The translations under genes and the position numbers were made by a program. A stretch of 64,000 nt of DNA from Botryllus schlosseri (taxonomy: Eukaryota), in NCBI GenBank assembly GCA_051294905.1, contig CM119386.1, positions 2,232,001 through 2,296,000 on the forward strand, read 5' to 3'. This document shows positions 16,901-55,900 of this stretch, one piece after another. Position 1 is the first letter of the stretch; every line of letters starts with the position of its first letter. The notes beneath the pieces were generated by a model that worked only from the letters and a program-made list of their open reading frames with translations, had not been told where the DNA came from and made no database searches.

Positions 16901-19900
16901 GAATGTCTGTATCACTATTATAAGTAGCCTATATATTTAGCATATTATTTAAACCACCGAGAAACTTATTCAAAATGGGACATCTATGTAATTAAAATGC
17001 GGTATTATGTCTGAAGGCTCACATAATTACTACATAGCATTGCGATATATGTTATATTTTTTGTAGGATACTACATGTTCATGACCGGTTTCAGTTTAAG
17101 GACCGATCTTGCAAATACTGACATGACAGAATACTGAAAGTATCATTGTGTTATGGATTCTGAATGGAGGCTAACGATGGCCACTGTATAAAGTCATTGA
17201 AATTTAATGATTTATTATTTGTTAATACACATTTAGCATACTCCTTCTGATATGTTGCATGCCAAATGCTTCTTGAAAAAACAAAACTAATACTATTTCT
17301 GGTGTTGTTAGAGAAAATCGGCGATTGCGGATGCACAGCGGAAGCAGTTTGTAGATGCAATGAGGCGTTGTGCCCCACTCTGCCAACATGCGACAGATGC
17401 CACAAGCTGGAAACGTCATATCCCACCAAAAATGACAGTCAACCCTGTGGCGGGAATTGTTGTCCAGTCGGCCGTTGTGTCCCCAAAACATGCCCACCGG
17501 ATACGGCAACGCCAAAAAATTATACTGCGGAATGCCCGTTTTTAGAGGTAATTTGATTTTGATGCATGCGTCCCATTGCAAATATGTTTTTCCCAGGGAT
17601 ATACAGATATCCCTGGTTTTTCCAATCCATTATCCTACCTTTTGATACAACATTAATTTATCTCCTGGCCACTTTACAATTCATGTGTCATATTGTAGGC
17701 TCCTCCAATGAAATAACATTTAGTTATGAACATTTAAGTTATCAAACATACTATTCTGCTTTCATGAATACCGAGAACTATTCAATATTACAATAACCTG
17801 CATGTAACATGCACCTATTTCATAGGCTCGCACAATTTTGCCTTGAAGTGACCTGCAATGATATAATTTACGAGACACAAGGTTCTAGTAGTTGTGCAGT
17901 CTACCTGAATTCTTTAAAAATGATTGAAATTTACTGATGCTATGTGTAAGAGGCAGACAGCCCAAGGTTATGTGAGAAGAGAGGGAGATTGTGGTTTTGA
18001 CTCTGACCTATTCCAGATATGCTAACTCTTTTCCGCATTTCTCCAAAGCAGCATTATATATTCTTTCTCAGGATAAAGGAGAATCTTATGACAAGGATGA
18101 CACAGAAAAGTGTTGTCCAAAACAATACAGTCCGGTTTGCGTCAAAAATAAATGTGACGTGTTCAATACTCCGTCCGAGTGTGAGCCAGGATACGAGATC
18201 CAACAAGTAAAGGTCAACGAAACGTCAAACACCAAAGTATCACTATATCGAAACTGCCCAATGGTTGACGAATGCTGCAAATACAAGGAGTGTGTGTGTA
18301 TATCATGTACGGATGGGTCAGGAAGACTTCTCTTAGGAGAGGAACGTTTGGATGAAAATGGGTGAGAGATCAAAGAATGCTGTTATCGGATAGGAAATAT
18401 TTGGTTCCTGTGTGTAAATAATAAATTTTTGTCCTTCTCTGTTTTTCATTTGAGATTCCACATCTGTTTTTAAGATTCCATAAATCAGATTATTCAATTG
18501 GTAATGCCTATTGAATCAGGCAGAAATACCTGATCAGCACAATACCGCAAAAACATTGCGTTATACGAGACTCAAAAGTTGGAAACTTCAAGCGATCCCC
18601 AATATCATTGATCAGCGCAGCAATGTGTTGTATCACGACTATTCTTAACAAATATCAGCCTGTATACCATGCAATTCTAATATCAAATTTCTCATCGCTT
18701 CAACAGTTGCAAGAGGATCAGTTGTCAGGCTGGTGTCCGAGGGGAGGATGGATGCTACCAAGTAACGGAACGTAAGCCAACATGTCCAGATCCTCCCATA
18801 TGCGACTGTAACCAAAGACTGAAAAAGACGCTGCCCACTGGCGGCGCCACTGACGTCAGCCAATGGTTATCACTGTGCTGCCCACGATACACGTACGTTT
18901 CTCCTCCATTGAATGCTCTCGGTTCACTTCAATTTTCTCGGCTTCAACACTTGCAGGTGTGAAGATTTGCCCTGTCCGGACGGATATCCTTCTGGTCCAA
19001 GCGCGTGCACTGCCCCATCCAAAAGAACTGTTGAATATTTGGTCAGTGGTTGTAACTTTGCCGCCTTGATTTCCGTGCCGATTATTTGCTCGATTTTAGG
19101 ACATTGATGGATGCGTCTATCCGAAGTGCGCAAAGGCCACTTGTAAGTGTGACCTGTGCATCGACGAGGACAATGTCACCCACGCCATCGGCACAGTATT
19201 TCCGGGAAGTGATAAATGTGACGAGTACACCTGTGTCAGAGGTAAGATGGCTTGATACATTCACAAACCAGACTTTTGATTGTAGTACTGTATTATGAAC
19301 GTTTGACCTCAATTGAAGGTCATGCATCTCAGCTCTTTTATGCAACCTAGTTTCTTGAAACCGGATTGCTGATCTAATCTATACGTTATTCACGCAATTT
19401 AAGATCTGGGTGTGTAAAATAATTTATGATGAAAATGAGAGGCCATTGGCACCGAATTTTGTGTGGATATGCAAAATCATGTGACGTCACAATCCCTCCT
19501 TATTAATGATGTCATAGAAACACTAGAATGCACTTTACTGCATGCCTCTGGTGTGCATACAGTGTTAAAACACACATGTGACGTTTTAATACCAGCCCTG
19601 CACTCAAGCCATAGAGTTAGTGTAGGAATTCCTGTATTCAATATTCTGCCAAATCACAAATAACGTTCCGTTTATGCCGGCTTGGTCCGATAATACCTAG
19701 ACCAAGCAACATTTTCCATGATTTCTTTCAGCGGAGGGTGCCGAGTGTCCACATTTGAAAATCACTCGCCAGGAATGCAGCCCAATATTGTGCCAAACTG
19801 ATTTTGAGGAATTGAAATCAGAGAAAGACCCGACCAAGTGTTGCCCGGATCAGGAATGTATCTGCAAGGTGATGCAAAATTTAGAGCTGCTGTTTTTTCG

Positions 19901-25900: not shown

Positions 25901-28900
25901 AATCGGAAGAGGCGGCTTGCCTGCAAACTACAGGTGAGTGCCAACGAATATATAAACACTAATTTAAAGTAGCCATTTATTATCAGGGTTGTAAAAGTTC
26001 CAAGGTTCCCAGTCACAAGTCAATCTCACTTTTATAGTTTTGGCTTGAGTCAAGTCGAGACATTTTCAATCCCCCACCGAGTGCAGTCAGTCACTGTCCA
26101 AGTCAGTGAGCAGCGGGTCGAGTACGAGTCATAGTGTTGTGACATAGCGTTGTTGCTCGAGTCATGAGCAATGACTCAAGTACAAGTCGAGTCAGTTCAC
26201 AAATTGACTCGAGTCGAGTAGAATGTAGTCGTTTTATCCGTTTAAAAAATGACTCGAGTCAAGCTAAGTCACCAAAAATTAGTGACTCAAGCCGGACTCG
26301 AGTCGAGTCATGACCCGAGTCATTGCAACCCTGTTTATTATGCTACATAACTATTTTTCTTGCTCCTATTTTAGATTCCAATGTACGTTTTATGGAACAT
26401 TGAGTCTGAAAATTGTTTATTGTATGATCCGTGCTTATCAATTTTGACCTTATTTTTTTCTCTGCAAGTAGTGTGCCTGTCGTATATGTATTTGAATACT
26501 GCCTATGCACTCGATTTTAAATGGTATTGATATGTGGCTAGGCTCATTTGAACATGTAATGAGCTATTATATAACAGTTTTTTTCAATCACAATCTTCGC
26601 AAGTAACAAAATGTACTCTGTTTAAAGAATCAAAACTTCAAAATTTGGCTGTTGTACGAGCTTTTCTTGTATACCAGAAGTATGGTACTCCATCATTGCA
26701 TTGATCCAGCAGACTTGATAGCGCTTATCTATGGACTGAACTCATCGGTGAAATCTCTCGCCACCAAGCCCGATTTCAGCAGCAATAAACAAATTATGCT
26801 CATACTCATATTTGCAGTAATTGAGGTCCTTAACCTCGTCAGAGTGAAAAGAGAAGTCCGTACGCGGTTATTTTTTAATTATCACCTAACCAGTTGGACT
26901 GGCCTAATCGAGATGCTGAAAATGTTGTTGCAGTAGATTTTGAATCTTCAAATGCTCTTTGTCATGGAAAATTGTTCCAAAGTCGTTATTTGTGTATGTC
27001 CCGCATCAATCTATGAAGTATTTTTTACACCCAACATCAAGTTACGCCGACAAGAACAAGGCAATCATAACCATCGGATTTAGATTAAAATCTCCTAGCA
27101 ATATTTACTACTATCATTATACAAACACAGAAGCACATATGTTTGATGGTGGCATCGCATTTGCTGGATTCCCTAAGACGAAAACGTTTAATGGAGGATG
27201 TTATGATTTTATAAGACTGCGTGTTGTCCTGTCAACCTACAATTACGTTTACTCATCATAAAATGTGTTCACAATTTGAGGATCCCTAGTCCGTATAGAG
27301 ACAAAATTCCACAAAATCTTTTCCAGTATCAACGAATAAATGCAATTGCACGGTCAACGCCGAATGTAAATGTAATCCTGACCTCTGTCCGACCGTGACA
27401 TGCAGTGAATGCGAGATCATGGACGAGAGGGATCCTGTGGTGAATTCATTGGCACCGTGCTCTGGCAGCTGTTGCAAGATAAGAACGTGCATAAAAAAGC
27501 CTTGCCCGTCCGTAACGGTGCCGAACATACCGCCTCTGTGCCCTTTCCTCGAAAAGATAAGTAGCATTTTGTGAATGAAAATACCGAAGTAAATATAGGT
27601 GATAATTTTCGTTACCAGCACAACGAGGTATACGGCAACGATAAATGCTGCCCGGAAAGAATCGATCTCAAATGTACAACAAACACTTCCGATTGCCCGA
27701 TTTCAAGCCCGACTACGTGCGAACCTGGATATCAACTCGAGACTATCCGCGCTGCCGATTCTACTGACATGAGAGTGCGCATGGCTATGAACTGCCCGAT
27801 GGTGGACGAGTGCTGTCCGATTCGCGTATGCGTTTGCAAGTCCTGCGTTTATGAAGGAGGAAGGATGGACCTTGGCGCATCGCCTGTCACTTCACCGGAC
27901 GGGTAAGATTAGCGCAGTGATAGATAGATCATTTATTCAAATTGTTTCACACGGAAAACATGAAAATTTCAAATTATTCATCGGTATAGATAGGGAAGAC
28001 ATGATACGTCAATCCCTTCTCTGTAACACAAAGATTATTCGTTACCGGTTATCATTGCATTCATCACGGACTCTTCCTTGTATTGTTCCGCCGAAATGTC
28101 CTTGAATTCGCACTGCTTAGCAAAGGCACGGCGTTTCTGAACGTACTCAGACATGGTGTTCGAAGGCTGCTGATTCCTATTGTGGCTAACTCATGACCCG
28201 CATAGACAAGAGTCTTCTTTTTCACGTACAAGCCCTCAAGAAATTTCATCGCATCCGTAAACGTCGATTCTTCCTCAACCAGCGAAAAAGATCCAGACGA
28301 CAAGTACCCTGCCATTATACTGAACCTATCCATCTCTGAGTCGCCATCCCTTCTGGCAGCATCAAGGGAAACTTTAGATACGCCTTTATTACGCCCATCC
28401 AGTGCTTGAACGCCTGAACAGCATCATCATCCCTTGGCACAGCCTTTAACTTGGATACGCGAATGAGTGTCTAGTTCGACGCGATAGTAGATCTTTTCAG
28501 TTAATAAAATTCTGGTGACCTCTATTTCACAGAGTATCCAAGGCTTGTATTAACTGAAAACGTGCATTATACGCGACACAGCTAGGCCACCAACTATTAG
28601 GTACCAATAAATAAATTAGGAGGGAGACAATATACAGTGGAGAAGAAATGTTATCAAGTACTAATTCGTTAACTATGTAAAGGACGAGACAATCGCACAG
28701 ATCGATCTAGAACCTATGGCCATGTCCTGAACAATATCCTCTGCTTCTCATGCGGGGCTACGAAATATAATCGACTTGTTCTATACAAATCTATGTGATT
28801 AGACTCAAATAAAAATTTGTAGATTTGTAAGTTTGCTTGGAAAGATCTATCTGAGACTTGTTTTTACCTGTTAATGAAACACATTTCGATGTGCATATTG

Positions 28901-31900: not shown

Positions 31901-34900
31901 TTTTGCTCCGAGTCATGAGTCAATCATCATTTGTGAAGCGCTGAGTGAAGTCAAGTAATTTCTCAAGTAATTGCTCAGTTTCCAGTTTAAGTCTTGGTAA
32001 ACACCCTTTATATAACTCTGTTTAGTGATATCAAATGGTTCGCATTTATAATATACGAATTTCCCTCACTTTTAGCACGTTCTGGTCGCATTTTCAATTA
32101 CCTGTACCAATAGACGAAATCCCAATAGTGTGGTTACTTTACTGTTCTTCGAAATTATAATGAAATGTCTGTCTTGGCCGTGTGAGTCTCGAGTCATATA
32201 GCTTGGTTTGAGTCATGCGTAATGACTCGATTCCAAGTCGAGTCAATACACAAATTGACTCCAGTGAAGTCATTTCCGTATTTTGAGAAAATGACTTGAG
32301 TCAAGAAGAGTCATCAGAAAATCGTGACTCGAGTCATTTTACAACCCTGTTCAAAATAGTACATTTTCTGTTAATTCTCTCTTTACAGGTATCCAATTTT
32401 TTCTCTTAACCTGAACAAAAAACATGTGTTCTCAAACCTGAATTCGTTAATACTTATGTGCATTTCTCAAGCTTATTTGCTGCACCGTTCCCCGAACTGT
32501 TGATTTTTGTACTCAGATTCAAATGCTGGATGTGCAGTACCGACATCGGACAGGCGGTATTGCGTCACCACACCTATACCTCGGAAGATCTGTGAAAAAG
32601 TAGGATGTTGTTATGATGGAACTGCACCGATGAATGCACGCTGCTACTTATATGTCGGTAAGATTTCATTTGGACTATGCATTGTGAATTGTGTCGATTT
32701 ATACAATATTTTGTGGCTATCGAGTTAGTCACATGCAGTGTTTTCTCTTCAGCAAGCAAGTTACTGCGAACAAAACATATATATTACGGTTGTTACAACA
32801 CAATTATACTTTCCTCTGAGCTTGTAAGTGTAAGTGAGCATTTTACAATATCGAAGAACTACCGTCCTGTTTTACCATTAGTGACATGTGCATGGCTGGG
32901 AAACAATAGTTTTCCCAAAATTGAGGCCTTCCATGGTATCGAAAATCTTTGTGGCATTGTTTCACAATTGGAAGTAACACAATGACACGGTGTTAGCAGA
33001 ATATCTTACTACAATCATTCTCGCATCGACTTTTCAGAAGCAACATTTGATACAATCAACGTCCGAGTGGTGTAAATTTCATGATTAGCTCAACTTATTT
33101 TACTTTCAGAACCAGCAGAGACATGTCCCATTCTTGTAAAAAAGGAATCTTCTTGCCCTACACCCTCTTGCAACGCACAGTTTGAGGTGCTGAAAGAAGT
33201 TCCTGTTGCTGGAGAATGCTGTCCCAACCGTACTTGCATATGCAAGGTATGTTTTGTGTTAAATTTGGAATTTGAGTAGCCAGTCAAAAATTAATGCAGC
33301 AAGCTGGGTCACAATTAACTCTTTCCTTCTATAGATTGTTCATGGTTACTCACATTACTGCGACACTGATATCCAGTTTGTTGTGGTGCACATCAATGTA
33401 ATCAGCAGTTAAAAGCTACAACAACTTTGCAAAACTATTACGTTATTTACCCTTAGATGAATTTAGATTGTTTATCTCTAAATGTGAATTTTGTCAACTT
33501 GTGAACTACCACCACGACCTCCGACCCTTGCTGAGCTGTGTATTGTTTGGAGCCGATTTTTTTTTATTTAGGCTATTAACTAACAAATATTGCAAATGTG
33601 AGCTATTTTCACACCCGGCCCATCATTTTACTTGATGTTAAAGAAATCAGAACCAGATTCATTGCATTTCAAAATAACTCGACTATAATAGCAGTCTTGA
33701 TTCCCAACATTTAGACCGATGAAATGTTGAAAGAAGTTTGCGACAACTATCGGAACGATACGAGCTCATGTGCAGACCCTGGAAACATGGTACTGAGACC
33801 GAATGGTAAATTTGTTGATCATCAGTGCTGTCCGCAAAAGGATTGCGTCTGCAAAGAAAAGGACCAAATAAGATGCCAACGAAAGTATGATACCTAGAGC
33901 GTTTTTTTTTTGTCAAAAAAGGGAAAATTTGGACCTGAAAAATCAAAATTTTGTCTTTTTTGACATAAACAAACTGAATTTTGACCTAATTTCGACTTAA
34001 CGTATGCAAATTAGGTGTTTTCCCACATAATGTTAAAATTATACCACTTATCTTAATTTCTGATTGGAACTGGCTGAGTAGTTTTGTCTGAAAAAAAGTT
34101 TTTGGCTTAGAAGCAGGCAACTTTTTACATGAAAAAAACAATATTTTAACAAAGTCTAATACCATGAAGAATTCCAGTGGTTACAATATGTATTATGGTG
34201 TAAATAATTTTAAAAAATTGCAGTACAACGAGAGACACTTTCCTACATTCTTGGGTAGAAAGTGCATGTCCATCTAAGAAGCTTGCCAAGGACGTTCAAC
34301 AGCAGCAGTTGTCGGCTCAGTTGTTGCTTCATTCCAACAATGTTGTCTACATCACAATTTTTCATCACGCGCTTCTTATATAAGAATGATGCAATGCCCA
34401 AGTAGTCTTTCTTCAGTTAGGATATTGCGGTACGTTGACCATAACACCATGTCTACCTATTTGTTTTATTTGATTTGTTTATGATTCACAATGGGCAGAC
34501 AATTAACCGTTTGCAACGGTAAGCCTATAAAGTAGGCTATAAGCTGTAAAATATCAAATGATAAGTTCACCGACAGTGCGAAATCTATGTTACAAACGAA
34601 ATGCAGACGTCAAATAGATTTTGACTTCATGAAAAATTTTGACAAATTTTGACCTAATGCTACAATTTTGGCAAAATTTTGACAAATTTTGACATGTCAA
34701 AAAATAACCGCGCTAATGATAACATATTTGTTTTGCTATGTCGATCCCACGATATTGGTTTCTCTAGGAAGTAGCTTATCATTAAATACTGCTGCGGTTT
34801 TGGAGTATGAGCAAGGTTTCTAGTCGGGAGTAGATTGGAATACTATTATAAAATTAACTTATCAATCGTGCATGTAGGTTGATAATAACACTATAATAGA

Positions 34901-37900: not shown

Positions 37901-40900
37901 ATCTTTTCGATTTTACGATGTTTGAATTTGAACCAGTGACTCATATTGTCTGTGGTAGCAAAAAGTGCAATGAAGTTTGATGTAGCCATACCGTAATCAT
38001 TGTCCACTGAATAAAAATCAAATATTGAAACAATCACATTGAACTAGGTGATGGATGTCAGTAAAAGCATTCATTGGTATGACGTAGTAGCTGAAGTCAG
38101 CACGTATATTCACCTTGTCGTTCGTCTTGAATTTAGGCATGAAAATGCTTCAAAGATCAGTGATAGCTTATAGCTTTGTTACACATTTGAGACATGGGAA
38201 TTAAAATTGAGTGCAGTGATATCATGTTGATCAATTTGATCCTCTGTTGTAGCTCGAGTGGAGGACAGTTTGCCTGTAAAACTGATGTTCATGTCAGTTC
38301 AAAGTACTGCAGAATTTCGATGTTATAAAAAGATTGGAAAGAGTCAAAATGACTTGTTATAGATTGTTGACGCTGATAATAATCCTAATCGTCGACTTTC
38401 ATCTACAAATGATAATAAAAACACATTGTATAATGCGCAAGTATGCGGGATGAGGAATTCAAAAGCGGGCTTATTAAAATTGAACAACATATGAAGGTAA
38501 GAGGTTTCCGTAGGTTGGAATATTAGGTGAAATGAATCGATCAAAACTTGACCCACAAATGCTACTCTTCTTCATCATTATTCAGTTTAATTCAGTTTTA
38601 CTAAATATTTATCTATGAAACACAAACACGATTGTGACATCATGAGAAGATATGGAGCGGGTTGAATGAACTGTCCGTCGATACATCAGCATGTGACATA
38701 TAAGGATATATGTAAAGGTTAATTTCAGGGCTAGGGTTAGAGTACGGGTTAGTTTTGGAGTTGTGAACCCACATACCACAGTGACGTATGTTGAAGTGTA
38801 ACACGCTCAGCTGTCGTTTTCCATTGTGTCGCATGCTCAAATGCCGGACAACCGAATGAACGACTGAGAATATTCAATAAATGAATTAAACAACCACCAT
38901 GGTGAAACATATTCTGCAAAGGTTGCCAAAACAATGATTAACATTCTCATTTCCAGATCGGATCTGTTTGGAGCGAAATCACTGATTGCAAGCGTGTCGG
39001 GCACAGATGCTCGGAACAAGTGCTAGACAACGGGTGCCATAAGATTATCACAACCGAAGAAACTCTGCCGTGTACATACTCGTCCATCGGAGACTTTGAA
39101 ACTAAAAATTGTGGTGCTAATCAGTACGCCGCGGAAACTGGAACAGATGGATGTTGTCCCACGTACACTTGCGGTATGTCGATTACAGTTATCTGCACGT
39201 ATGCATGGTTGGTATGCTTCATCACAATGATCAATATATACATATTGTAATCGTGGATTTCATCTCCTAAATTATATATGTATGCCACTCCTACCATGAA
39301 TTCACTTTGATATCCTATGAATTCTAGTATTTGTAGCTTGGTGCCACATCAGTTACCAAGTCAACCGTTTTGTAATCATTGTTAAATAATATTGCTCTGC
39401 AATATCGTGTTAAATTTCTGTATTAACAATATGTGCACTAGCACTAGCACTAGCACTAGCACTAGACTGAACAGCATTAAAGGTTTTAACAAAATTTGAA
39501 TTCTGGTTAGTTAAACTTACGCAACGGCATACAACACCAGTTGTACTTTGGTTAAGATCTCACTGTTTATGACAAAGAAATACAAATTTCCCGCTACATC
39601 AAGTGAATGTCATGAGATTGCTAATCATTTATTATAACAGGAGTTTATTTGGTGTTTACCAGGGTTGTGACCAATTCACAAAGTTCTAAATCACAAGTCA
39701 ACTTGACCTTTATAGTTTTGGGTCGAGTCAAGTCGAGTCATTTTCCATTCATCATCGAGTCAGGATACAACGGGTCGGGTCGAGTCTGAGTCATAGTGTT
39801 AAGACTCGAGTCCAAGTCAAAGTCATAGCGTTTGCTGTTCACTATCGAGTTTAAGTTAGGCTCAACTCATTTGTGAGAAACTCCTGGCTGATATCGAAGG
39901 CCTGGGAATCATAATAGACTCATTTTCCGCACTCTAAATATGTTTATTCAAACAGATAAAGGATATTTTCTAGGCCTATTTTTCAATTTTCGGTCCTGAG
40001 ATACGAGACTTGAATAGGTCATATAGCATGTGCCGAGTCATTCATAATGACTGGAGTACAAGTCGAGTCAATACACGAATTGACTCGAGTCGAATGGAGT
40101 CATTTTCCCCTTTTTGAGAAAATGATTTGAATCAAGTTTAGTCAATGAAAAATTTTGACTCGAGTCATTACAATGTTTACAGCCTCTATTTTTAATGGAA
40201 GTCATTTGAACTGGGATTAGCTTTGCTTTGATTTCTGCACCTCCTAATGCCGTCTCTCTTTCTCACGTTAATGCAAACGATCCGTAATCAGTGCTTCCTT
40301 GACAGAACCTTGCGGTAGCTCCAACTGGAACTGCGACGACATCACACAAGTCCGACAGTCCAACGACACACACCCGCGTTGCCCGGGACAATGCGTATGC
40401 GCGTCTCCTATGACAGAAGATCAAAAGGAATATTGCTTAAAAAACGCGAAATGTGGCGAATACGAGAAAGCGGTTGATATCTCTCTCGGTGAAACCGGGA
40501 CGGCGCACACCGACAAATGCTGCGCCAACTACAAATGCGTGTGTGACACCTGTCCATCGGCCATTGTGGGGCCAGGGGCATTGTCACCTAATGCGACTAA
40601 TTGTGAGGAGGTGCGTGCCACTCCCGAAGGCCTGAAATGCTGTCAGAATCATGAGATTGTGTGTAGGGAATCTTGCGAATGCCCCACGTTGGATTTGAAT
40701 TGCCGAGAAACACAAGGATGCTCGCAGACTGTCAGTAAGTCCAATTTATAATTCTCTTGGATTCCTATATTTCTAACGATATATATGTGGACAGTATATT
40801 TGTGTCTAATTAGAGTTAGCAGGCAATGTTCTGAATCCGAAAAGTACTTGGAAATCCAGGGTTGCATTCGGAGAATAGTATTAGTTGTAAAAAGTAATCA

Positions 40901-43900
40901 TTTGTATCAGAATTAAGTCATGGTTTTGATGGGATGCACATAACTTGTGTAATTTGTAGCTTTGAACACTGGATGTGGCTAGAATCACCTCTCCATGACC
41001 AACGACAGTATACTGAAACTATAAAAAAGGAAGTTTCCCTTTGTGTACAACCATTATACAATATCTATATACACATCGTCAATGATCATCCACTGTAGCA
41101 AAGCTATCTTTAAATCACTTGGCCTTCACTCGTACTCGGTTAACTACAAAAGAGTTAGAAACAAGTAGTCTAATGCCTTTGTATTGCGATTCCATTCTTC
41201 TACAGGTTTTAATGTAAACGGTTTCAAAGCTGCACGGGCCTCGGCGAGTGCCTGATGGTATTCAATAAAAGTATATATAATTAGGAAGCAACACAATCCT
41301 TAGACACGGAATGATCCTATTCGGCACCATAAAATTCTACATCCACATCAAAATCTGACCATACTGTATAAAAACCGAACCAGCATAAAATGGCAAAACA
41401 AAGACACGGTTGTTTTCTTCGCAAATTTACCATCTCTCTAATTCCAGAATTGCTGTAGTGCCGCAGACGGTAACAATATTCTGCTTTCAGCGAAAGCCAA
41501 CAAATGCAACTGTCCAGTAGAGGCGACGTGTTCCTGCAATGTTGAGGCGTGTCCGGAGGTGACTTGTGGCAGATGCCAAGTGAAGACCAGCACTGACCTT
41601 CCTTTCGATTCCGGCTCGCAATGCGGGGGAAATTGCTGCCCCAATGTCACATGCCAGCCGAAGACTTGCACGCCTGTTGACGACATCTCCATTCCTTCGC
41701 AATGCACCTTTCTGAAACAGATAAGTCTTACATATTTATGACTGTCCGATGTCAGTGATTATAGGCATTGGTTTTGGACTCTGCAAGCCGTGGTTCAAAT
41801 TGGTTCTTTTACTGTTTGCTGAATTCGTTATATCTTTTGACTACTTCCATTTATACGTGACAGATATATTGGCAAGACTACATAATTTTTGCTCCATGGA
41901 TTTTATCAAGTAGAAAGTGGATTTGGGATATGCACGCACCACTTTTATGAGTGATATGCTCACGACGTCTGGGCGAAAGAACCCCGGAATCTGGCAGTCA
42001 GTTTTTATTCATATTTTCATCATTTCAAAACATCAAAAGACTGCGATACAATGAAAAGATAGGAAGGTGTCGAAACAACTCGGATTAGCTTTTAAGTTCA
42101 GACACCCACTTTAGCCTAGGCGAAGTAAAGAAGAGGCATGCACACTGAATGAAAGGTAATGCAGAGAATATAAGACGCAAGCGACAAAATGAGGTGGAAT
42201 GTGTCAGAGGGCGAGGTCGACGTTAGGTCGTGGTCCGGTAATCCTGAATGCTGGCTAGTATTCATTTAGAAGAAATTGCTTGTATTTCAACTTGAATGCG
42301 GACATGCTCGACGACGGTAGGATAGCCGGCGAGATGCTGTTCCAAAATAACTGATAACTGAGTACATTTTCGAAAATTGCCTCCATTTTCAGATGCATTG
42401 GTTGTTTTGTGTTAGCCGCGAAGACGCACCCTACAATTTCGAAAGTCTCCGATTAACTGCTAAAATACAAAATCTACCGTACTGCTAATTACATGAAAAC
42501 TTTTTAAATTTTCCGCTGCTATTTGGAGTAGATTTGACTTGTCTTTGAAACTACTAGGCCTACTATTTTAACCACCCCTGCTCAATAGGTCTGTTCAACA
42601 ATACCTTTTTTGTCAAATTTTACTGGCTACCTGAGAAAATTGTTATTTTGCCTAAAAAAACGCTGCACACCAATTTTGGCTCAACTCAAACCTACAGAAG
42701 CATTGCTATATGAGAAAATCTTAGTAATTAGTTATTAAAAATTCATCTAAAATTTTTATAAATTTTACTGGCTACCCATGAAATGGTTAGGTTGTATGAA
42801 AAAATGATTCACAACAAAATTGACTCAATTCGAACCCGTAGAAGCGAAGCTATTAACATTTGGGATTTCAAATTATCGTATTTACGGTGGGTAGATCTAT
42901 GAGAAGAAGAATTTGCCGCCGTAAATACTCTTTTTTTCCAATCCAAAGTTTTGTATTCCAATAACTTTGCTTCTACTGGTTGGAATTGTGCCAAATTTGT
43001 TGTGCATAGTATTTTCAAGCCACCTAACAATTTCATGGGGTAGCCGGTAAAATTTGAAAAAAATTTATATTTATTTTCATTGGATAAATCCAAAACTATT
43101 TTCTTATATAGTAACGGTTCTATAGGTTAGGATTGAGCCGAAATATTGTGCAGGGCTTTTATTAGGCAACATATCAATTTTGTCAAGTAGCCAGTGAAAT
43201 TCGAAAAAAATGTCATTGAAACACTATTCCTATTACCAATGCAGCGTGCAAAACACATCAAATTGTTTTCAGCACACTGAGATATTCACCAAAGAGGACA
43301 AGTGCTGCCCATCACGTAAATTACTTGCCTGCGACGGCAATTGCCCGGACAATATGGAGCAGACGAATTGCAGTGAAGGCTACGACCTGAACACGGCCAA
43401 CCCCACAGACTCTCCTGATTCTGCCGTACGGGCAATCGCGGATTGCCCGAAAGTGAAGACATGTTGCCCGCACACGATTTGCATTTGCAAATCTTGCGAG
43501 TACGAAAACGGGAAAAGGCTTCGACTGGGGAGCAGTGTTTTGTCCGAAAATGGGTAACAATTAATCTCTCACATTTTTTACCGATTGAGTAGTTTGTAAG
43601 AAGCCTGGTGAATGTCACAGAGATGTCATAAATTGTTGTCAAGATTGAGAAATAGGTTGAATTAGCAGTGAATAAGTACTGTGACCGCAGTACTCTAATA
43701 CAGTGGTTCTCAACCTTTTTGACCTTGCTGACCGGGAAAACTTCTAAACACATGTTGCGGACCGGGGAACCTTAAATACTTCAAATTTAACCCAGTATAT
43801 ACTTGCGATAAATGTATGCAACTCAAACGCAATTACTAAAGACTTTGAGTAAGGCTGCTTTTCTGATATTAGACACGTTATAAGCGTTATACTCGGCTCT

Positions 43901-46900
43901 ATTGAATTTTCTGTAACGCGAAGACATGTTAAAACCACTGACGTGATTTTGATTGTTCCGGTTCTTCGAAAATATTGTGACTGTTTCTGGATAGCCACTA
44001 TTATATTGCCAAATGTCGCTAAATTGTACTGTCAAAAATGAACAATGTTTGTTCAAAAAGTCTTCTTAGCTTTCACATATAATTATCGTCGTAAACGGGG
44101 CTTTTTGTAGGCTAATTTGGAGCTCTTTCATGCAACACCCGTAGCATTGTCACATACGTCAAGTCCGTGAACTCTATAGCACGAAACCAAGCAGTAAAAT
44201 ACGTTCCAAATTTCTAAATCAATTATTAAATTGTCATATGACATTCTTGAATATTTGACCGGCAGTTGAGAACCACTCCTCTAATATATTCTCTCTACCT
44301 GCACCAACCCACTCGATTTTGCTTTTGCATGTTTTGGCTGTAATATTGACTTACCGGTATTTGCATTTCATGTAATGCCCAGTAGAAATTCATTGAGTAA
44401 ATCGGCATCTTTTTATCAGCGACATCCATCTGCATGACAGTGGCAAAGTAGGGTTCCAATTCGTACTACTTATGATCCTTCCGCATTGCGATAACAGGCT
44501 CAATGTTTGTATCAGATTATTACCAAATAAAGACCTGTCATCCGTTGCCGAAAAATACTTTTGAAGTTACTTACCTGAGTACTTTCTTGTCTTGGATTTT
44601 TCGAAAATGCTATAACCATATTACATCCATATAAGTTGTATCAGTGATTATTTTACTACCTTTCAATAAGTTATAAGTCGAATATTACATTACACAGTCC
44701 TTACCGTTACCATTTTGTAGCCATCTCTGTAAATAACCAGATCCACCAGACCCTTTCTGTTCCAGTAAAGGGAATCAGTTGTATGAAGTATATCGATATA
44801 CAGTTATAAACCATCTAGTTAGGAGATCAATCAGGCAATTTATGATTGAAACTGAGTTATTTGTATTTGAATGTATTTGGAATTTCTCAGCATTGCTATT
44901 GTAACAGCAATTTGCAATGTGGGAATGCTCAACTTCAGAGCTGTATTTTGAATGATGATAGCAACTCAGCAATGCCATGTCAACTTGCACAGCCATAAGT
45001 GCAGAACCTGCAAATACAGCATATTACAGCACATTGCTGCATTGTCTGATTTTCTCTGGTTCAAACTCTGCATTGATCAGATAAGCTTGAACAGGTAGAT
45101 TTTATATTCCGCATAAATGTGTCTTCGTGCGACCCTGATATCACGAATCTGGAGTTCTTATGACATCAGAAGTCTCCTCATACCCGCACATAATAGAGGA
45201 AACCTTCTCATGACTATCATGAAATCGCACACTCCACCTGAAATCAATGATACATACGCGAGGGTGCGTCCGTCATTTTGTGTTTGATGCAAAACTTTGA
45301 TTTCAGTTGCTCGCGTTTTACATGCACGGCCGACGTCAAAACTGAAGACGGTTGCTACCAAGTCACACAAAAGTTTCCTGAGTGTGCGCCTGCACCTCCT
45401 ATTGAATGCTATCAAACTTTGACTACGATACCCGCAAACGTGACAACAAAAGTGAACAGAACAGGACAATGGAAACAACTCTGTTGTCCGGAGCACAGGT
45501 ATTTATCTGTGGTAACATTGGGCGAAATAGATTAAAAGCAATCATAAATGTCAGAGTTGAAGATAAAGAATGCACCGTCGACTATAATCCAGGTCCAGCA
45601 TCCTGTCCTTACCCAGCAACGAGGGAGATATCATATGAGGTAAAATCTTCCATTCCTTCGATATGCACACATTGTGAATATGTTCTTCCACCAGACTGTA
45701 GATGCCTGTGAAAATCGAAACTGTCCGATTGCCAGGTGTGTGTGCGACAAATGCGTGGACGCCGATAATAACACACACGATATCGGAACTGTGTATTCTA
45801 ACGGGAACAAGTGTGAAAATTACACGTGCTTGAGAGGTACGATAAATGATATTTACCTTGCCAGCTGCACCTTGTGTTGAGTAACTATATCCCCTTTTGC
45901 GTTCTGTGGTGATAGTATTTAATACGAATTGGTAATAAATCTTGGATCGAATCAATTCGTTTCACTGGATTGTATCTGCAGTCTGCACTATAGTGAATAG
46001 ACATGCGGAGGCATTGATAGTCAAATAGAAGCATTATTGCATTTTAAAATTGCTTGAAAATTTCCAAGACACCAATTCTTGGATTCGTCCCATCGTTAAC
46101 GGTATCACATTTCTAAATAAGTGCAGTGACTATGCCATATCTGCAATGATTCTATCATCTATCATTATTGAAATAAACCCGAATATTTTCGGCTGACACT
46201 CGTCAGGGCTAATCGTCAGCAACTAGTAGAGAATTAGAAAGAATATTCTATATCAACAATCGTATCACAAATTATGAAATCACCAGCATGAAATTTCGAA
46301 TACAAGAGCGTTCAATGTACTAGATGTTAGATGATATGCAAACTCCTCTTGTTGACACAGCCTTGGCTGGTGTATTTTGATAAAAGTCGACTCCAAGTCA
46401 CACAAATGAAAGTTCAACAAAAGGAGTTCTTGTACCATCTATAAATAATACATTGAACGCTCTTTGCATTCGAAATTTCATGCTGGTGACGTCATGTTTT
46501 GTGATACGAATGTTGATATACAATGGTCTTTTCAATTCTTTACTAGTTGCTGAAGATTACTCCTGACGAGTGTCAGCCGAAAATGTTAGGGTTCATTGCA
46601 ATATGAATAATTGAATATGCTACTGAATTGTATATTGGAGTAGCGTACCTCCAAAAAGCTCTGCAAGCAACAATCATATTCCTTTCGTGCATTTCTAAAA
46701 CTTATTTGTGGCGCTGTTGTCCGAATAATTACCTGTTGATTTATGTACTCAGATTCAAGTGCAGAGTGTGCAGTAGCAACGTCAGACAGGCAATATTGCG
46801 TCTCCTCGCCTATATCTCCAAGGAGGTGTGCTCGAATGCGATGTTGTTATGATGGGAGTGCGCTGGAGAATGCACGCTGCTTTAGGAAGAGAAATACCGG

Positions 46901-49900
46901 TAAGGTTTTCTTTAGACTAGGCATCGCGAATTGTGTTGATTTATGAAATTTTTTGTGGCTATCGAGTTAGTCAAATGAAGTGTTCTCACTTCAGCAACCT
47001 AGATACCTAGAACAAAACATATCGGTCAAGGTAGGTAGAACACGACTATACTTTCCTGTGAGGTTATTAAGTGTAAGGATTTCAAGAATATCGAAAAAAT
47101 TACAGTCCTGTTTTACCTTTAGTGACATGCGACTGGCTGGGAAACAATAGTTTTTCCAACAGTGAACCCTTCCAATATAATAACACAGTGCTATAGGAAT
47201 TTCCTATTGACTTTTCAAAAGCCACATTTCATTGAATGTTTGCACACTGCTATACCATCAATGTCCGAGTGGTGGCAATTTCTTGATTGGTTAAACTTAT
47301 TTTACTCTCAGAACTATGCTATATCTGCAATGATTCTTTTGACATTGCAGGTGGAGACAGCCTATGCCCACAGCCAAAATTGAATGTGCCTGATTGTCCC
47401 ACTCTAACTTGCAACGATATGTATCAGCTGATGAATTCAACAGCAGTACCTGGACAGTGCTGTCATGAGGAGGCATGCTACTGCAAGGTAAACTATGGAA
47501 GGTTGTATGATTGTGAAGATGCAGGAAATATTCGTATCCAATAACCACCAGACAAGTGATAACTACATGACTGACACTTCAGTAGTTGGGGCAACATAGA
47601 GACACACACAGAGCAGCCCGTCTGAGAATATGCACTTCAATATACTTTATTTTTAGTTATTAATATTATCTTAATCAAAACTGCTCCACACTGAAAAGAT
47701 GGTGAGGAGTGCAAATGAATTTAAGTCTCTCAAGCTAACGACCTATAGATAGCAAATAAGAATGATAAAATTGGACATGCGTACGGAATAAGAATGCATA
47801 AAAATAGCCAATCAATGAATGATGTATATGTCATACAGTATGATGTATAGTTAACATCATTTAAAATAATGCCACACTTGTGGTTGTGGCTTGGTACATT
47901 CTCCGAGATGCTACTAACGGTATATGCATGTCTGTCGTCATGATCTTATCGCCGGTATCAGTCAATACCGCTAAACCACTGTTCTTTGTTTTGTTAAATC
48001 CTGCATATTTATATGTGTTCTATTTATTTTGGCGTCATTGTTGACGAAATAAATATCTTTCGCTTCCTCTGTCATTGCTTTGGGACACTGTACTTCCTTG
48101 TTCAGTTGCCATTGCCTCTAATCTTCGACGAAACCGAGGATTTTGATGATTTTATAGGCCTAGCTGAATGATCAATAACCATGCCCATACTGTACTGGGT
48201 CGTTTTGACATTTTCTAGTCCACACATGTACCCCAATATTGTATAAGTTTTGATATGGGTCCTAACAGATGGATGCAGTTTGAGAGACTTGTTGACCTGT
48301 TGTTCAGTTCAAGTTCAATTGAAATTTCATATATTCAAAATGCAACAAGATAGGAAGTAGTAAAACGACTTGGAATAGTCCATCAACTTTGGCCAACTAA
48401 CAAAAAATAATATGGGGCATATCAGGTATGCGTATTGTGATACAAATATCCAAAGATACCCTAAAATAGGCAAGCAATGTAAATTGGGGATGAGCTTGTG
48501 GCTGTAGATATGTGAAACACCAATGGGCTGATCTCGAGCGCAATCCACTATTTATTGTTGACATTCCAGCCTGATGAAATGTTGAAAAATGTTTGTGACA
48601 ATTGGGTGGAAGACGCTAGCAACTGTTCGGACCCAGATAACATGATGGTCGAGCTCACCGGGAAATTCAAAGGCCACGAGTGTTGCCCGGACAAAAGTTG
48701 CATGTGCAAACCAAAAGAGATTCTGACCTGTTCGAAACCGTGAGCTGGTTAATAGTTATGAATTCTTTGATAGCAACAGTGAAGTGAATCATATATTACA
48801 ACCGTATTTTCTTTTACATTAAAATTGAACTTTATATTAATAATGAAATGAACCCGAATATTTTCGGCTGACACCCGTCAGGGGTAATCGTCAGCAACTA
48901 GTAGAGAATTTTAAAGAGCATTGTGTATCAACAACCGTAATACCAAATATGACGTCACCGGCATGAATTTCGAATAATAATCGGAGCGAAGAGAGCGCTT
49001 AAGCTCAACATACTATTTTCAGATGCGACACAAACTCTTTCTGTAGGCACAGACTTGGCTTGCGGATTTATTCGACTCAAAGACACCCAAATGAAAGTGT
49101 AAACGACTTCTCCAGATAACACAAAAAATGTGGTCGCGTTAACTTTTCGCGCAAACAGGATTATCCACCAAATCTGTGTCAATGGCAGAATTTATGCGTC
49201 AGCCGAAAATATTCGGGTTCATTTCAATATGACTATGCCATTCAATTGTATATTGCAGTTCATATGATTTGTACAGAAGTGAGCCACAGAATATTTACAA
49301 AAAGGAAGTTGGCCATGGATATAAAACAAATAGGAGCCACTGCTCTACAATATTGAATTAATTCCCAGTTTTTTTTCAATATTGAGGCTTGCAGTCTGAA
49401 TAGTCACTTTGGCATTGGCGTTTCATTACTAGGAGTAGCCCACAGTTCAATCAACGCAAAAAACAAGATACTGTGGACTCATAGAACATGTGGACTGCCC
49501 TGTTCTCAAGTTACATTATTGCGTGTCATAAAAAAATACCTGTGCTGTCTTTAGAACTTGTCCGAGCGGAAATTACAAATTGGTCGAAACTGCACCGGCA
49601 ACGGAGGACAAATGCTGCGCAGATTTTGAGTGTCAATGCGACTGCTCTGAGACTCGTTGCGACTACCCTTCTTATGTTGTAAACAGGTATCATGCAACAT
49701 TTCTGCTTGCTAGTTAATAACTTAATAGTCATCTTGAGATTGTGGCGGTAATACTTTGAGTGATATCTTTTCAGCACGGAAGGCACGTGTGATTGCAAAT
49801 GTGCTTGTGATCCAAATCGCTGCGTTGCCCAGGAAAAAGTTTGTCCTGCCGGTGAATATCTATCCCAAACGGGAACAACAGATGCTGGATGCTGCCCAGT

Positions 49901-52900: not shown

Positions 52901-55900
52901 CTGAAATTTTAATAATTTACTCCAACCTCACCCTTTTCCTTTTGGGGCAGTTTGCTCCCCGGATTATGTGTGTTTTTACCAGTTTTACTGTGAATAAATA
53001 ATATATTTTTATAATATTTATCAAAGACGTAGTACAGAGGTATATGTAAAGAATGCTAATGTATTTGGAAATTATTATTATTCCAGGCCATGAAAAATTT
53101 TCAAATTTAATTGATGGTATGAGTTGCTTAACAATGGTTTTCTTCGCAACACGGCAACACATCAAATGTGAACTTCATGTTGAAATCCATATTCAACAGA
53201 GCCATGCACAACTTCAACATGGAATTGCGATTCATCAAACGAAGTCAGACTACCGACTGAGAGCAATCCTCGTTGCCCTGGAAACTGCACTTGCGTTCAG
53301 CCAATGCAAGAAAAGAATTTGAAGGCGTGCCGCGAAACTGCAAGTTGTGGGGTGTATGAGAAGCCTCGCTTGCTATCATCAGGCGCCGCTGGGGGTAAAC
53401 AGCACCCGGACCATTGCTGTCCCAATTATGAATGTGTCTGTGACACTTGTCCCAACACTACTGTCACTAGAGACCAGCTTACAGCTAGATCAGAATACTG
53501 TGAGGAGGTTACTGTCCAGCCTCCTGGAGATAGAAAATGCTGCTTGAATTATCATGTCACTTGTGGTGCGGATTGCGCTTGCGAAGAGATAAATCTGATG
53601 TGCAGCTCTACAACTGGCTGTGAGCAAAAGCCGGGTAAGTCCAGCTTAATCTTATCCCTGTTTATTCTTACGTCAAAGGCAGGTAAGATACGGCCCGAAA
53701 CGGGATTTTGAGCTGTCCGCAGACAGTTTTCGGTCTTACATGATAATGTGTACCATGGTCACAGTCTAACGCAATCTACCACATATGTCTCATTGCATTC
53801 AACATCTATTGGAGTACATTAACAAGACAAAGATGCGTTGCAGTCTAACAGATGTTCATGTGCTGTCTATACTAAGGGTTTTTAAGTCTGACAGGCAGCC
53901 AGAGTTCCTCGAACTTGTTAACAATTTTGATCGACCACAGATGTCTTCTTGACTTCAACAGCTATTGAAGAACTTTATGATATCTAATTCATGAGATACT
54001 GTTTTTATGTCTCTAAGCTTTAAACTTGAAGCCGACACTAAATACAATTATTTCCATGTATAGGTGGATGTATCAATTCAGGAATCCGGCCCGCAAGTAC
54101 TTCATTTTTCCTTACCAGGCTAATCGACTGAAGAAGCTGCCCTCCCCTGGCTTAAATGATTGCTTAAATGATATAGAAGTCCCTCCTATATATTTGAGAA
54201 TTGGAAACCCCAATTCGAAAGTATTGCTGTGTTTACGGCATTTGATGCCGTTTCGCAACCACGGTCATTTGTACGCCAGGACTATGCATAATTGCTAAAC
54301 CTTTGGCAAAATTAACTTTGGCTCAATGGTTTTATAAAACAGTACGAGTATAGATACACCTCCAAGACAGGAAGCAGGAATCCTTCACAGTTGAATAAGC
54401 CATATCATGATTATATCCTTTGCTTTTAGTGTCAACGAACCAATGCAATTGCGTGACCGAGGCAGTATGTCAGTGCAACAACGCGACTTGCCCTCAAAAG
54501 TCTTGTGGCGAATGCCAAGAGCTGCAAGTAACGAAACCGACATCGAATCCTGCTCTTACATGCAACGGTAACTGTTGTCCGGAATTGACGTGTGTGCCGA
54601 AGCCCTGTCCGGAACAAGAAGATACGACCATTCCGTCGAAATGTACTCATCTGGAACAGATAAGTGTCTTCTTATATCCTTTTATCGGTTACCCCTGAAA
54701 TCTAGGTCTGAATACAAGCTTCTTCTGTACGTCTTCAGTGCACCAGCGTATCTTTGTGAGCTAGTGTCAATGTAAAATCCTGGAGTAGCTCTACATTCTC
54801 AGTCGCAAAAACTCTTGTCAGTTCCAAGAGTCAGAACACCGACCTACAGATTATTATTATATTATTATTATGTTTGGGATATTTTGTCGAAATATTTTTG
54901 CCAATATATTTACTCTAAACTTTCAACTGACTCTAATCGAAAGCAAACATCAAGAAATACATAGCTTCAAATCAGAAGTAGGCTATTATCAGAATTACTG
55001 TTTGTGACATACCCTTACAGACAAAACATACATCCCAAGATACCATCGGCCGCTAAAACGCACGATACATCGTAACCACAAAAATGCTGATACATTACCA
55101 CAGCACCATCGAAATATACCTTTGTACTATTCATTATTCTAAGCTTTTCTTGTAAGGCCTCTGTCCAAAATGTTAGAGTGACTAAATTGTCCGTTCGTAC
55201 ACATTGTTTTCTGCTACCTCAACGTTCAGTACCATTAAAACATTGCAGTGATATCTATAGTTTCTATATATACCTGAAACATTGTAGCAATGCATATTAA
55301 TTTCTGGTTGATGAAATGTAATTGATGCTGTGTGACGACTGTGCCATAATATTTAATGTTAAATTGAAAAAACTATGTATGGCGTCTATCATTTCAATAA
55401 TTATAAGATGAAGTCATTTTCCTCTGGAGTTTTCAAAGGCACTGAATTTGATATCCCTAATAATGTAAAAATTACCTGTGTAATCAAGGGTGTTGAGAAG
55501 CAACGTGAATAAACAAGTCTAGTTTGTGATGAAAAAATACCTTATTAGGTAAATTCCATTGAAATGGTCTTATTATTTTGGTTGGGGTTAGGGTTATGGA
55601 AAAACTCCTCATCTCAAAACAGGTCGCTGCAATGGATAGCAAGACAGAGCCGCTTTCTTCATAGATGAATTATGGTCATTTGTCTGTTCCATATTTCCTG
55701 AGATTTACTCTTGGTTCTTTTCAGCACAAATTGGACTATTCGAACGATACGTGCTGTCCTAACAAGGAAATCGCCTGCAAAACCGTTCTCAACGAATGCC
55801 CTTACCCGATTTTGACGTCTTGTCCGGAAGGTTTCGATCTGCATACGACCCCAGCGGCAGACTCCACTGACTCGACCGTGTCCAATGTTGCTGACTGCCC

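What the first reader, a model, noticed from the sequence alone, without database searches (positions are those of the whole stretch)
41721..43275. Second AT-donor intron (unit 3), 1.5 kb and TE-filled, still keeps ATAAGT...CAGCAC
Seen: the same non-canonical termini as in unit 2, in an intron containing a LINE fragment and a foldback. Inference: independent conservation of the termini in an unalignable intron argues for selection rather than a sequencing error.
Basis: partly seen in the sequence, partly recalled or inferred. Interest (0 to 1): 0.7.

Follow-up and report, generated by a model that had tools for sequence, protein, structure and literature searches.

The report
Spliced AT-AC intron, major-spliceosome type
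A 1.5-kb, transposon-filled intron in a sea-squirt mucin-like gene really is cut out at AT...AC instead of the usual GT...AG, and it looks like an ordinary major-spliceosome intron: a new example, in three repeat copies, of a rare but already known intron class.

Summary
ATAAGT sits at 41721-41726 and CAGCAC at 43270-43275. A transcript contig from another individual (run X6, 2625 nt, depth 57.7) joins 41720 directly to 43276. The same contig removes its three other introns at normal GT...AG sites and keeps one open frame throughout.

The intron is therefore 41721-43275, AT...AC, phase 0. Only a 1-nt slide is formally possible.

Units 2 (27557-27621) and 4 (54660-55727) carry the same two hexamers, 100% identical. 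The neighbouring intron sequence is only 13-43% alike. Unit 1 has GTAATT...CAG at the homologous place.

The donor CAG|ATAAGT is the U2-type consensus except for +1. No U12 donor (ATATCC) or U12 branch site is present, although the genome does encode U12 and U6atac snRNAs. The best reading is a U2-type ("type II") AT-AC intron, a class known since 1997. Which snRNAs it depends on was not tested.

About 64% of the intron is mobile DNA: an antisense LINE 3' fragment and a 639-nt foldback.

This scan already reached the same reading for unit 2 of this gene. The new points are modest: direct cDNA support for unit 3, and a GT-AG paralogue plus an invariant in-frame CAG 3 nt before the AC, which suggest a one-step switch.

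The parts
41491..41720 (+). Upstream exon (exon A of repeat unit 3). It ends ...TTT CTG AAA CAG, phase 0.
   Evidence: X6 contig record 9, positions 1671-1900; preceded by a canonical intron, 40735-41490, GTAAGT...CAG.
41718..41726 (+). 5' splice site CAG|ATAAGT. It matches the U2-type consensus MAG|GTRAGT everywhere except +1 (A instead of G), and G is present at +5.
   Evidence: Identical ATAAGT in units 2 and 4.
41721..43275 (+). The AT...AC intron, 1555 nt, phase 0.
   Evidence: contig positions 1900 and 1901 lie on 41720 and 43276; only a +1 slide is possible (TA..CA), and the spliced ORF is open.
41995..42348 (-). 5'-truncated 3'-end fragment of a high-copy non-LTR (LINE-like) retroelement, antisense to the gene.
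   Evidence: over 4000 candidates at 92-94% identity with a shared end; variable 5' ends, a (TCAG)n-type tail, and a longer copy with an ORF2-tail-like ORF; depth is thousands of times the single-copy level.
42579..43217 (.). Foldback (MITE-like) element that is nearly all inverted repeat. Its right end lies about 58 nt from the 3' splice site.
   Evidence: arms 42607-42709 and 42961-43063; copies match on both strands at 70-80% identity. MFE -247.9 against -128.5 kcal/mol for shuffles, z = -25.7.
43218..43275 (+). 3' splice region left free of mobile DNA. It has a short pyrimidine run TTGTTTT, then an invariant CAG (43270-43272) and the terminal CAC (43273-43275).
   Evidence: There is no TCCTTRAY branch site.
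43276..43553 (+). Downstream exon (exon B of unit 3). It starts ACT GAG ATA... and is followed by a canonical GTAACA donor.
   Evidence: record 9, positions 1901-2177, with 0 mismatches..
27557..27621 (+). Paralogous AT...AC intron of unit 2, 65 nt, ATAAGT...CAGCAC.
54660..55727 (+). Paralogous AT...AC intron of unit 4, 1068 nt, ATAAGT...CAGCAC.
   Evidence: from sequence and reading frame only.
17548..18071 (+). Homologous intron of unit 1 with canonical ends, GAG|GTAATT...TCTCAG|GAT.

Best explanation
Window 41721-43275 is a real, constitutively removed intron of a + strand secreted, mucin-like gene. The gene has C8, TIL and trefoil exons followed by ~13-kb tandem cysteine-rich units. The intron has AT...AC ends but U2-type signals, so it is a 'type II' AT-AC intron. 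Shown: the ends, the cDNA junction, the open frame across it, and conservation of the ends in three paralogous units. Inferred from established splicing biochemistry: U1 pairs with CAG|AUAAGU as it would with a normal donor, since 8 of 9 consensus positions match. The major spliceosome carries out step 1. In step 2 the intron's first and last bases must form a compatible non-Watson-Crick pair, so an A at +1 favours a terminal C over a terminal G. That would explain why the AC at 43274-43275 is used and not the AG three bases upstream. The two transposon insertions, together about 64% of the intron, lie between the signals and leave the first 274 nt and the last 58 nt untouched. The foldback can pair on itself in the pre-mRNA.
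For:: X6 contig record 9 (2625 nt, depth 57.7) lies on 40305-40734, 41491-41720, 43276-43552, 45306-45495 and 45552-45639, with contiguous record coordinates; the three other introns in that contig are GT...AG, the spliced frame is open for 396 codons, and the AT-AC joint can slide by only 1 nt; exon A occurs only four times in the 495-Mb genome, all in this window, so the contig does not come from a processed copy elsewhere. ATAAGT and CAGCAC are invariant in units 2, 3 and 4 while the neighbouring intron sequence is about random. +2 to +6 match TAAGT 5 of 5, against 4 of 8 matches to the U12 donor ATATCCTT. No TCCTTRAY lies in the last 60 nt. Literature: U2-type AT-AC introns are defined exactly this way, and there are 15 in human, 10 of them in one gene family (PMC1557818). 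G at +5 is typical of them (PMC2831892).
Against: The junction rests on one assembled contig from one run. The only raw-read RNA run laid (X23) does not express the gene. Which snRNAs the intron depends on was not tested, and the genome does have U12 and U6atac genes. The pyrimidine tract is short (50% Y at -26 to -7) and no clear yUnAy branch site was found in the last 60 nt. No orthologue from another species could be examined for unit 3.
Confidence: 0.88

Rival explanations
1. It is a U12-type (minor-spliceosome) AT-AC intron.
For: The ends are AT...AC. The genome encodes U12 (101.9 bits) and U6atac (75.7 bits) snRNAs. First-reader notes list textbook U12 AT-AC introns elsewhere in this genome (unchecked).
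Against: The donor is ATAAGTCT, not ATATCCTT: positions +4, +5 and +6 all differ, and these are the near-invariant core of the U12 donor. No TCCTTRAY branch site occurs within 60 nt of the 3' end in any of the three paralogues. The donor matches the U1 consensus instead.
Confidence: 0.04
2. The main product uses the AG at 43271-43272 (AT...AG, adding a His codon) or some other site, and the AT-AC contig shows a minor or assembly-made form.
For: CAG|CAC is in frame, so both products would be readable. Contigs show presence, not proportions.
Against: The contig that carries the AC junction has depth 57.7 across five exons, and no alternative joint was listed. An A at +1 with a terminal G is a poor second-step pair (established biochemistry, cited in PMC1557818). 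An assembly mis-join would need a shared 30-mer, and there is none. It would also have to land by chance on the predicted frame-preserving bases.
Confidence: 0.04
3. The unusual ends are an assembly error or a private allele of the reference, and the true ends are GT...AG.
For: A DNA run of another individual (X5) did not cover the donor. Its base calls at the acceptor were not among the differences listed.
Against: Three paralogous introns in the same assembly carry both changes. The cDNA junction excludes CAC, which a GT...CAG intron would have kept in the mRNA.
Confidence: 0.02

Closest known systems
U2-type ('type II') AT-AC introns of vertebrate voltage-gated sodium channel genes (SCN4A, SCN5A and paralogues), as summarised in Sheth et al. 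2006 (PMC1557818)
   Same: AT...AC ends. The donor fits the U2-type consensus apart from +1 and has G at +5. There are no U12 signals. The intron is multiplied by duplication of its host sequence: 10 of the 15 human cases sit in one gene family.
   Different: Here the copies are tandem repeat units inside one ascidian mucin-like gene. One paralogous unit has GT...AG at the same place. An in-frame CAG lies 3 nt before the AC in all copies. Dependence on the major snRNAs was shown by experiment for SCN4A and SCN5A, but not here.
U12-type AT-AC introns (minor spliceosome)
   Same: The terminal dinucleotides. The machinery is encoded in this genome.
   Different: This intron lacks the /ATATCCTT donor and the TCCTTAAC branch site close to the 3' end.
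Engineered G1-to-A plus last-G-to-C double mutants of yeast and human U2-type introns (Parker and Siliciano 1993 and later work, as cited in PMC1557818)
   Same: An A at +1 is rescued for the second step by a C at the last position.
   Different: Those are laboratory mutants that splice less efficiently. This is a natural intron, conserved in three copies.
Mass non-canonical splicing in larvacean tunicates (Fritillaria, Oikopleura; PMC13326754)
   Same: The host is a tunicate, and non-GT/AG introns are handled by the major spliceosome.
   Different: In larvaceans it is genome-wide, involves other dinucleotides and goes with altered U2AF and snRNA modification. Here the other introns of the gene that were checked are ordinary GT-AG.

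Membership tests
U2-type (type II) AT-AC intron | The intron begins with AT and ends with AC, as judged by a cDNA-to-genome junction. | tested here: met
   the contig joins 41720 to 43276; the only other placement is a 1-nt slide to TA..CA.
U2-type (type II) AT-AC intron | The 5' splice site fits the U2-type GT-AG consensus except for A at +1 (criterion of Sheth et al. 2006), including G at +5. | tested here: met
   CAG|ATAAGT, with TAAGT 5 of 5 at +2 to +6. This is a direct comparison with the consensus; the SpliceRack PWM score itself was not computed.
U2-type (type II) AT-AC intron | No U12-type donor or branch-site motif. | tested here: met
   4 of 8 matches to ATATCCTT, and no TCCTTRAY in the last 60 nt.
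U2-type (type II) AT-AC intron | A pyrimidine tract and a U2-type branch site upstream of the 3' end. | tested here: inconclusive
   only TTGTTTT directly before CAGCAC, 50% pyrimidine at -26 to -7, and no yTnAy match in the last 60 nt of unit 3.
U2-type (type II) AT-AC intron | Splicing requires U1, U2, U4 and U6, and does not require U11, U12, U4atac or U6atac. | not testable with these tools
   This needs snRNA blocking or depletion in extracts or embryos.
U12-type AT-AC intron | /ATATCCTT donor. | tested here: not met
   the donor is ATAAGTCT.
U12-type AT-AC intron | TCCTTAAC-like branch site roughly 10-20 nt from the 3' end. | tested here: not met
   none in units 2, 3 or 4.
Non-LTR retrotransposon (LINE) fragment, for 41995-42348 | Copies share a 3' end and are truncated at variable 5' points. 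Longer copies encode a reverse transcriptase. | tested here: inconclusive
   The shared 3' end with a simple-repeat tail and the variable 5' ends are met. No RT domain was found: the ORF of a longer copy has no Pfam hit and only weak Atlas leads to clusters with PF09004 or RVT_1.

The most novel reading that the evidence does not exclude
The invariant, in-frame CAG three bases before the terminal AC may be a working part of the site. It could be read as an ordinary 3' AG during early recognition, while catalysis is pushed to the AC because the intron starts with A. Such a CAG|CAC tandem would turn GT-AG to AT-AC switching into a single-mutation step that keeps the frame: change +1 and the acceptor moves by one codon. 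That would explain why unit 1 of the same gene has GT...CAG at the homologous place. It would also contradict the published view that U2-type AT-AC introns are 'trapped' relics of U12 introns that cannot switch without two simultaneous mutations (PMC2831892).
Probability: 0.2. Interest if true: 0.6.

Novelty: new member of a known kind. Interest (0 to 1): 0.4.

Why it matters
U2-type AT-AC introns make up roughly 0.003-0.008% of introns in the animals surveyed (PMC1557818). Gene predictors and many aligners mishandle them, so the exons around 41720 and 43276, and those of units 2 and 4, are likely to be mis-annotated unless these sites are allowed. This gene also holds three AT-AC copies and one GT-AG copy of the same intron side by side. 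That is a natural series for asking how the first and last intron bases co-evolve. Finally, it shows that such an intron tolerates about 1 kb of transposon insertions as long as the terminal signals are spared.

Tried and rejected
1. The GT at 41725 (ATAA|GT) paired with the AG at 43272 gives an in-frame TGA at once. No AG or AC acceptor restores the frame (reasoned).

2. An upstream in-frame donor, CAA|GTGAAG near 41580, is not conserved in units 2 or 4 and is not used by the contig.

3. The U12 reading was rejected on sequence.

4. Reverse-transcriptase template switching was rejected. The two junction sides share only one base, and the joint is the assembled form.

5. Cross-species tests led nowhere for unit 3.
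- A profile of exon B against 1.84 billion proteins gave one hit, P0001.
- P0001 is 80% identical to the unit 2 read-through ORF and keeps Q-H at the intron end.
- Its DNA could not be fetched and its cluster has one member.
- The two unit 3 ORFs found no relatives. The length limits of that tool apply, so this blank means little.

6. The raw-read RNA run X23 has no reads on these exons, only on the repeats.

7. Run X5, DNA of another individual, covers the acceptor but not the donor, and the listed differences do not settle the acceptor bases.

8. Rfam and tRNA scans of the intron found nothing credible.

9. Pfam gave nothing for the cysteine-rich unit exons or for the LINE ORF.

10. A tree of the four units was not built. 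Without an outgroup it cannot show the direction of the change.

Full report
What is there. A long + strand gene runs through the window. It has a C8 exon (462-668), a TIL exon (16044-16265) and trefoil exons (32504-32725, 46740-46943). After those come roughly 13-kb tandem units of cysteine-rich exons that match no Pfam family. The finding lies in unit 3. ATAAGT starts at 41721, directly after ...TTT CTG AAA CAG. CAGCAC occupies 43270-43275 and is followed by ACT GAG ATA.

Is it spliced there? I laid four public runs on 39800-45700. Run X6 holds a 2625-nt contig at depth 57.7, from another individual: it differs by 2.8-4.3% in two exons and not at all in three others. Successive record positions of this contig lie on 40305-40734, 41491-41720, 43276-43552, 45306-45495 and 45552-45639. 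Record positions 1900 and 1901 fall on 41720 and 43276. In one search the contig's three other introns resolve to GTAAGT...CAG, GTAACA...CAG and GTATTT...CAG, and the spliced sequence is open for 396 codons. The unusual joint can slide by only one base, which would give TA..CA.

The contig skips four introns cleanly, so it derives from RNA. A profile of exon A finds only four copies in the 495-Mb genome, all in this window, so it does not come from a processed copy elsewhere. The raw-read RNA run X23 does not express the gene, so I have no read counts. Minor use of the AG at 43272 cannot be excluded.

Is it more than chance or error? The homologous phase-0 intron is bounded by the same two hexamers in unit 2 (27557-27621, 65 nt) and unit 4 (54660-55727, 1068 nt). 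The hexamers are 100% identical in all pairs, whereas the next 30 intronic bases are 13-43% identical, which is about random. The flanking exons are only 34-46% identical in protein. So all twelve terminal bases have been held while everything around them drifted. Unit 1 has GAG|GTAATT...TCTCAG|GAT at the homologous position.

Which spliceosome? The genome encodes U12 (101.9 bits) and U6atac (75.7 bits) snRNAs, so the minor pathway is available. The intron lacks its signals, however. The donor is ATAAGTCT, which matches ATATCCTT at 4 of 8 positions, and +4 to +6 all differ. No TCCTTRAY occurs in the last 60 nt of any copy. CAG|ATAAGT instead matches the U2-type consensus at every position but +1, with G at +5. 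This is how U2-type ('type II') AT-AC introns are defined in Sheth et al. 2006 (PMC1557818). That paper counts 15 in human, 10 of them in the sodium-channel gene family, 6 in mouse and 3 in fly. It also recalls that a G-to-A change at +1 is rescued by a G-to-C change at the last base in yeast and human introns. Ciona has at least 40 AT-AC introns of unstated type (PMC2760879). That the first and last bases pair, so that A goes with C, is established knowledge. Its application here is inference, and snRNA dependence was not tested. One weakness is that the pyrimidine tract is short and no clear branch-site match was found near the 3' end.

What fills the intron? Window 41995-42348 is one copy of a family with over 4000 candidate copies at 92-94% identity. 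Copies share the end that carries a (TCAG/TCAA)n tail and begin at variable points. A longer copy runs into an ORF that looks like the C-terminal tail of a LINE ORF2. That ORF has no Pfam hit and only weak Atlas leads. I read this as a 5'-truncated LINE 3' end lying antisense to the gene. That is probable, not proven.

Window 42579-43217 is a foldback element with over 5500 candidate copies that match on both strands. It folds at -247.9 kcal/mol against -128.5 for shuffles, z = -25.7. Together the two elements make about 64% of the intron. They leave 274 nt at the 5' end and 58 nt at the 3' end untouched. No RNA family or tRNA was found in the intron.

Comparison and novelty. This is a new member of a known, very rare class. 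The same scan already reached that reading for the 65-nt unit 2 copy. I confirmed the sequence features of that copy but did not lay reads on it. Two things go beyond a bare new example.

First, a GT-AG paralogue sits next to three AT-AC paralogues of one intron.

Second, the CAG at -6 to -4 is invariant although the neighbouring bases are random, which points to constraint on it as well. Because CAG|CAC is in frame, a single change at +1 could move the acceptor by one codon and switch the intron between GT-AG and AT-AC. Lin et al. 2010 (PMC2831892) argue the opposite: that such introns derive from U12 introns and are trapped because switching needs simultaneous changes at both ends. My alternative is a hypothesis only. 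The direction of change cannot be set without an outgroup, and no orthologue could be retrieved.

Verdict. I put the U2-type AT-AC reading at 0.88. Interest is moderate to low (0.4), because the class is known and the same intron family was already reported by this scan.

Noticed in passing
window 54674-54682: Unit 4's intron carries a perfect U12-type donor consensus, ATATCCTTT, 14 nt downstream of its ATAAGT donor. Using it would be out of frame with the AC at 55727, and only a weak branch-site-like TTCCTGAGAT lies about 28 nt from the 3' end. It is probably chance, but it is worth a look in junction reads for unit 4.
   Followed up: partly
P0001 (Logan contig of 2165 nt, sample SRR25569784), against window 27565-27903: The only hit among 1.84 billion representative proteins is a 113-aa ORF, 80% identical to the unit 2 read-through ORF (end of the intron plus exon B). 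It is presumably from a related species. It keeps Q-H, which fits CAGCAC, at the intron end. Its DNA was not retrievable.
   Followed up: partly
window 16600-56000, + strand exons: The cysteine-rich exons of the repeat units match no Pfam family and have no detectable relatives outside this lineage. Only the C8, TIL and trefoil exons are recognisable. The repeat module looks lineage-specific or fast-evolving.
   Followed up: partly
window 41967-42360 and L008-L012, L017: The LINE-like family is young (92-94% identity, thousands of copies) and is transcribed on both strands in the bulk RNA run X23, at depth about 60-70 where the host gene is silent. Another piece with the same LQYGILCW motif lies at window 29932-30144.
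   Followed up: partly
window 40305-45639 (X6 contig): The transcript contig differs from the reference by 2.8-4.3% in exons 40305-40734 and 41491-41720, but by nothing in the next three exons. That suggests high heterozygosity with a haplotype switch, or a contig that mixes alleles.
   Followed up: no
window 45499-45554 and 27557-27621: The same gene has very short introns (56 nt GT-AG, 65 nt AT-AC) next to introns of 1.5-1.8 kb, at least one of them (41721-43275) swollen by transposons. The AT-AC ends work at both sizes, if the unit 2 junction reported earlier holds.
   Followed up: no
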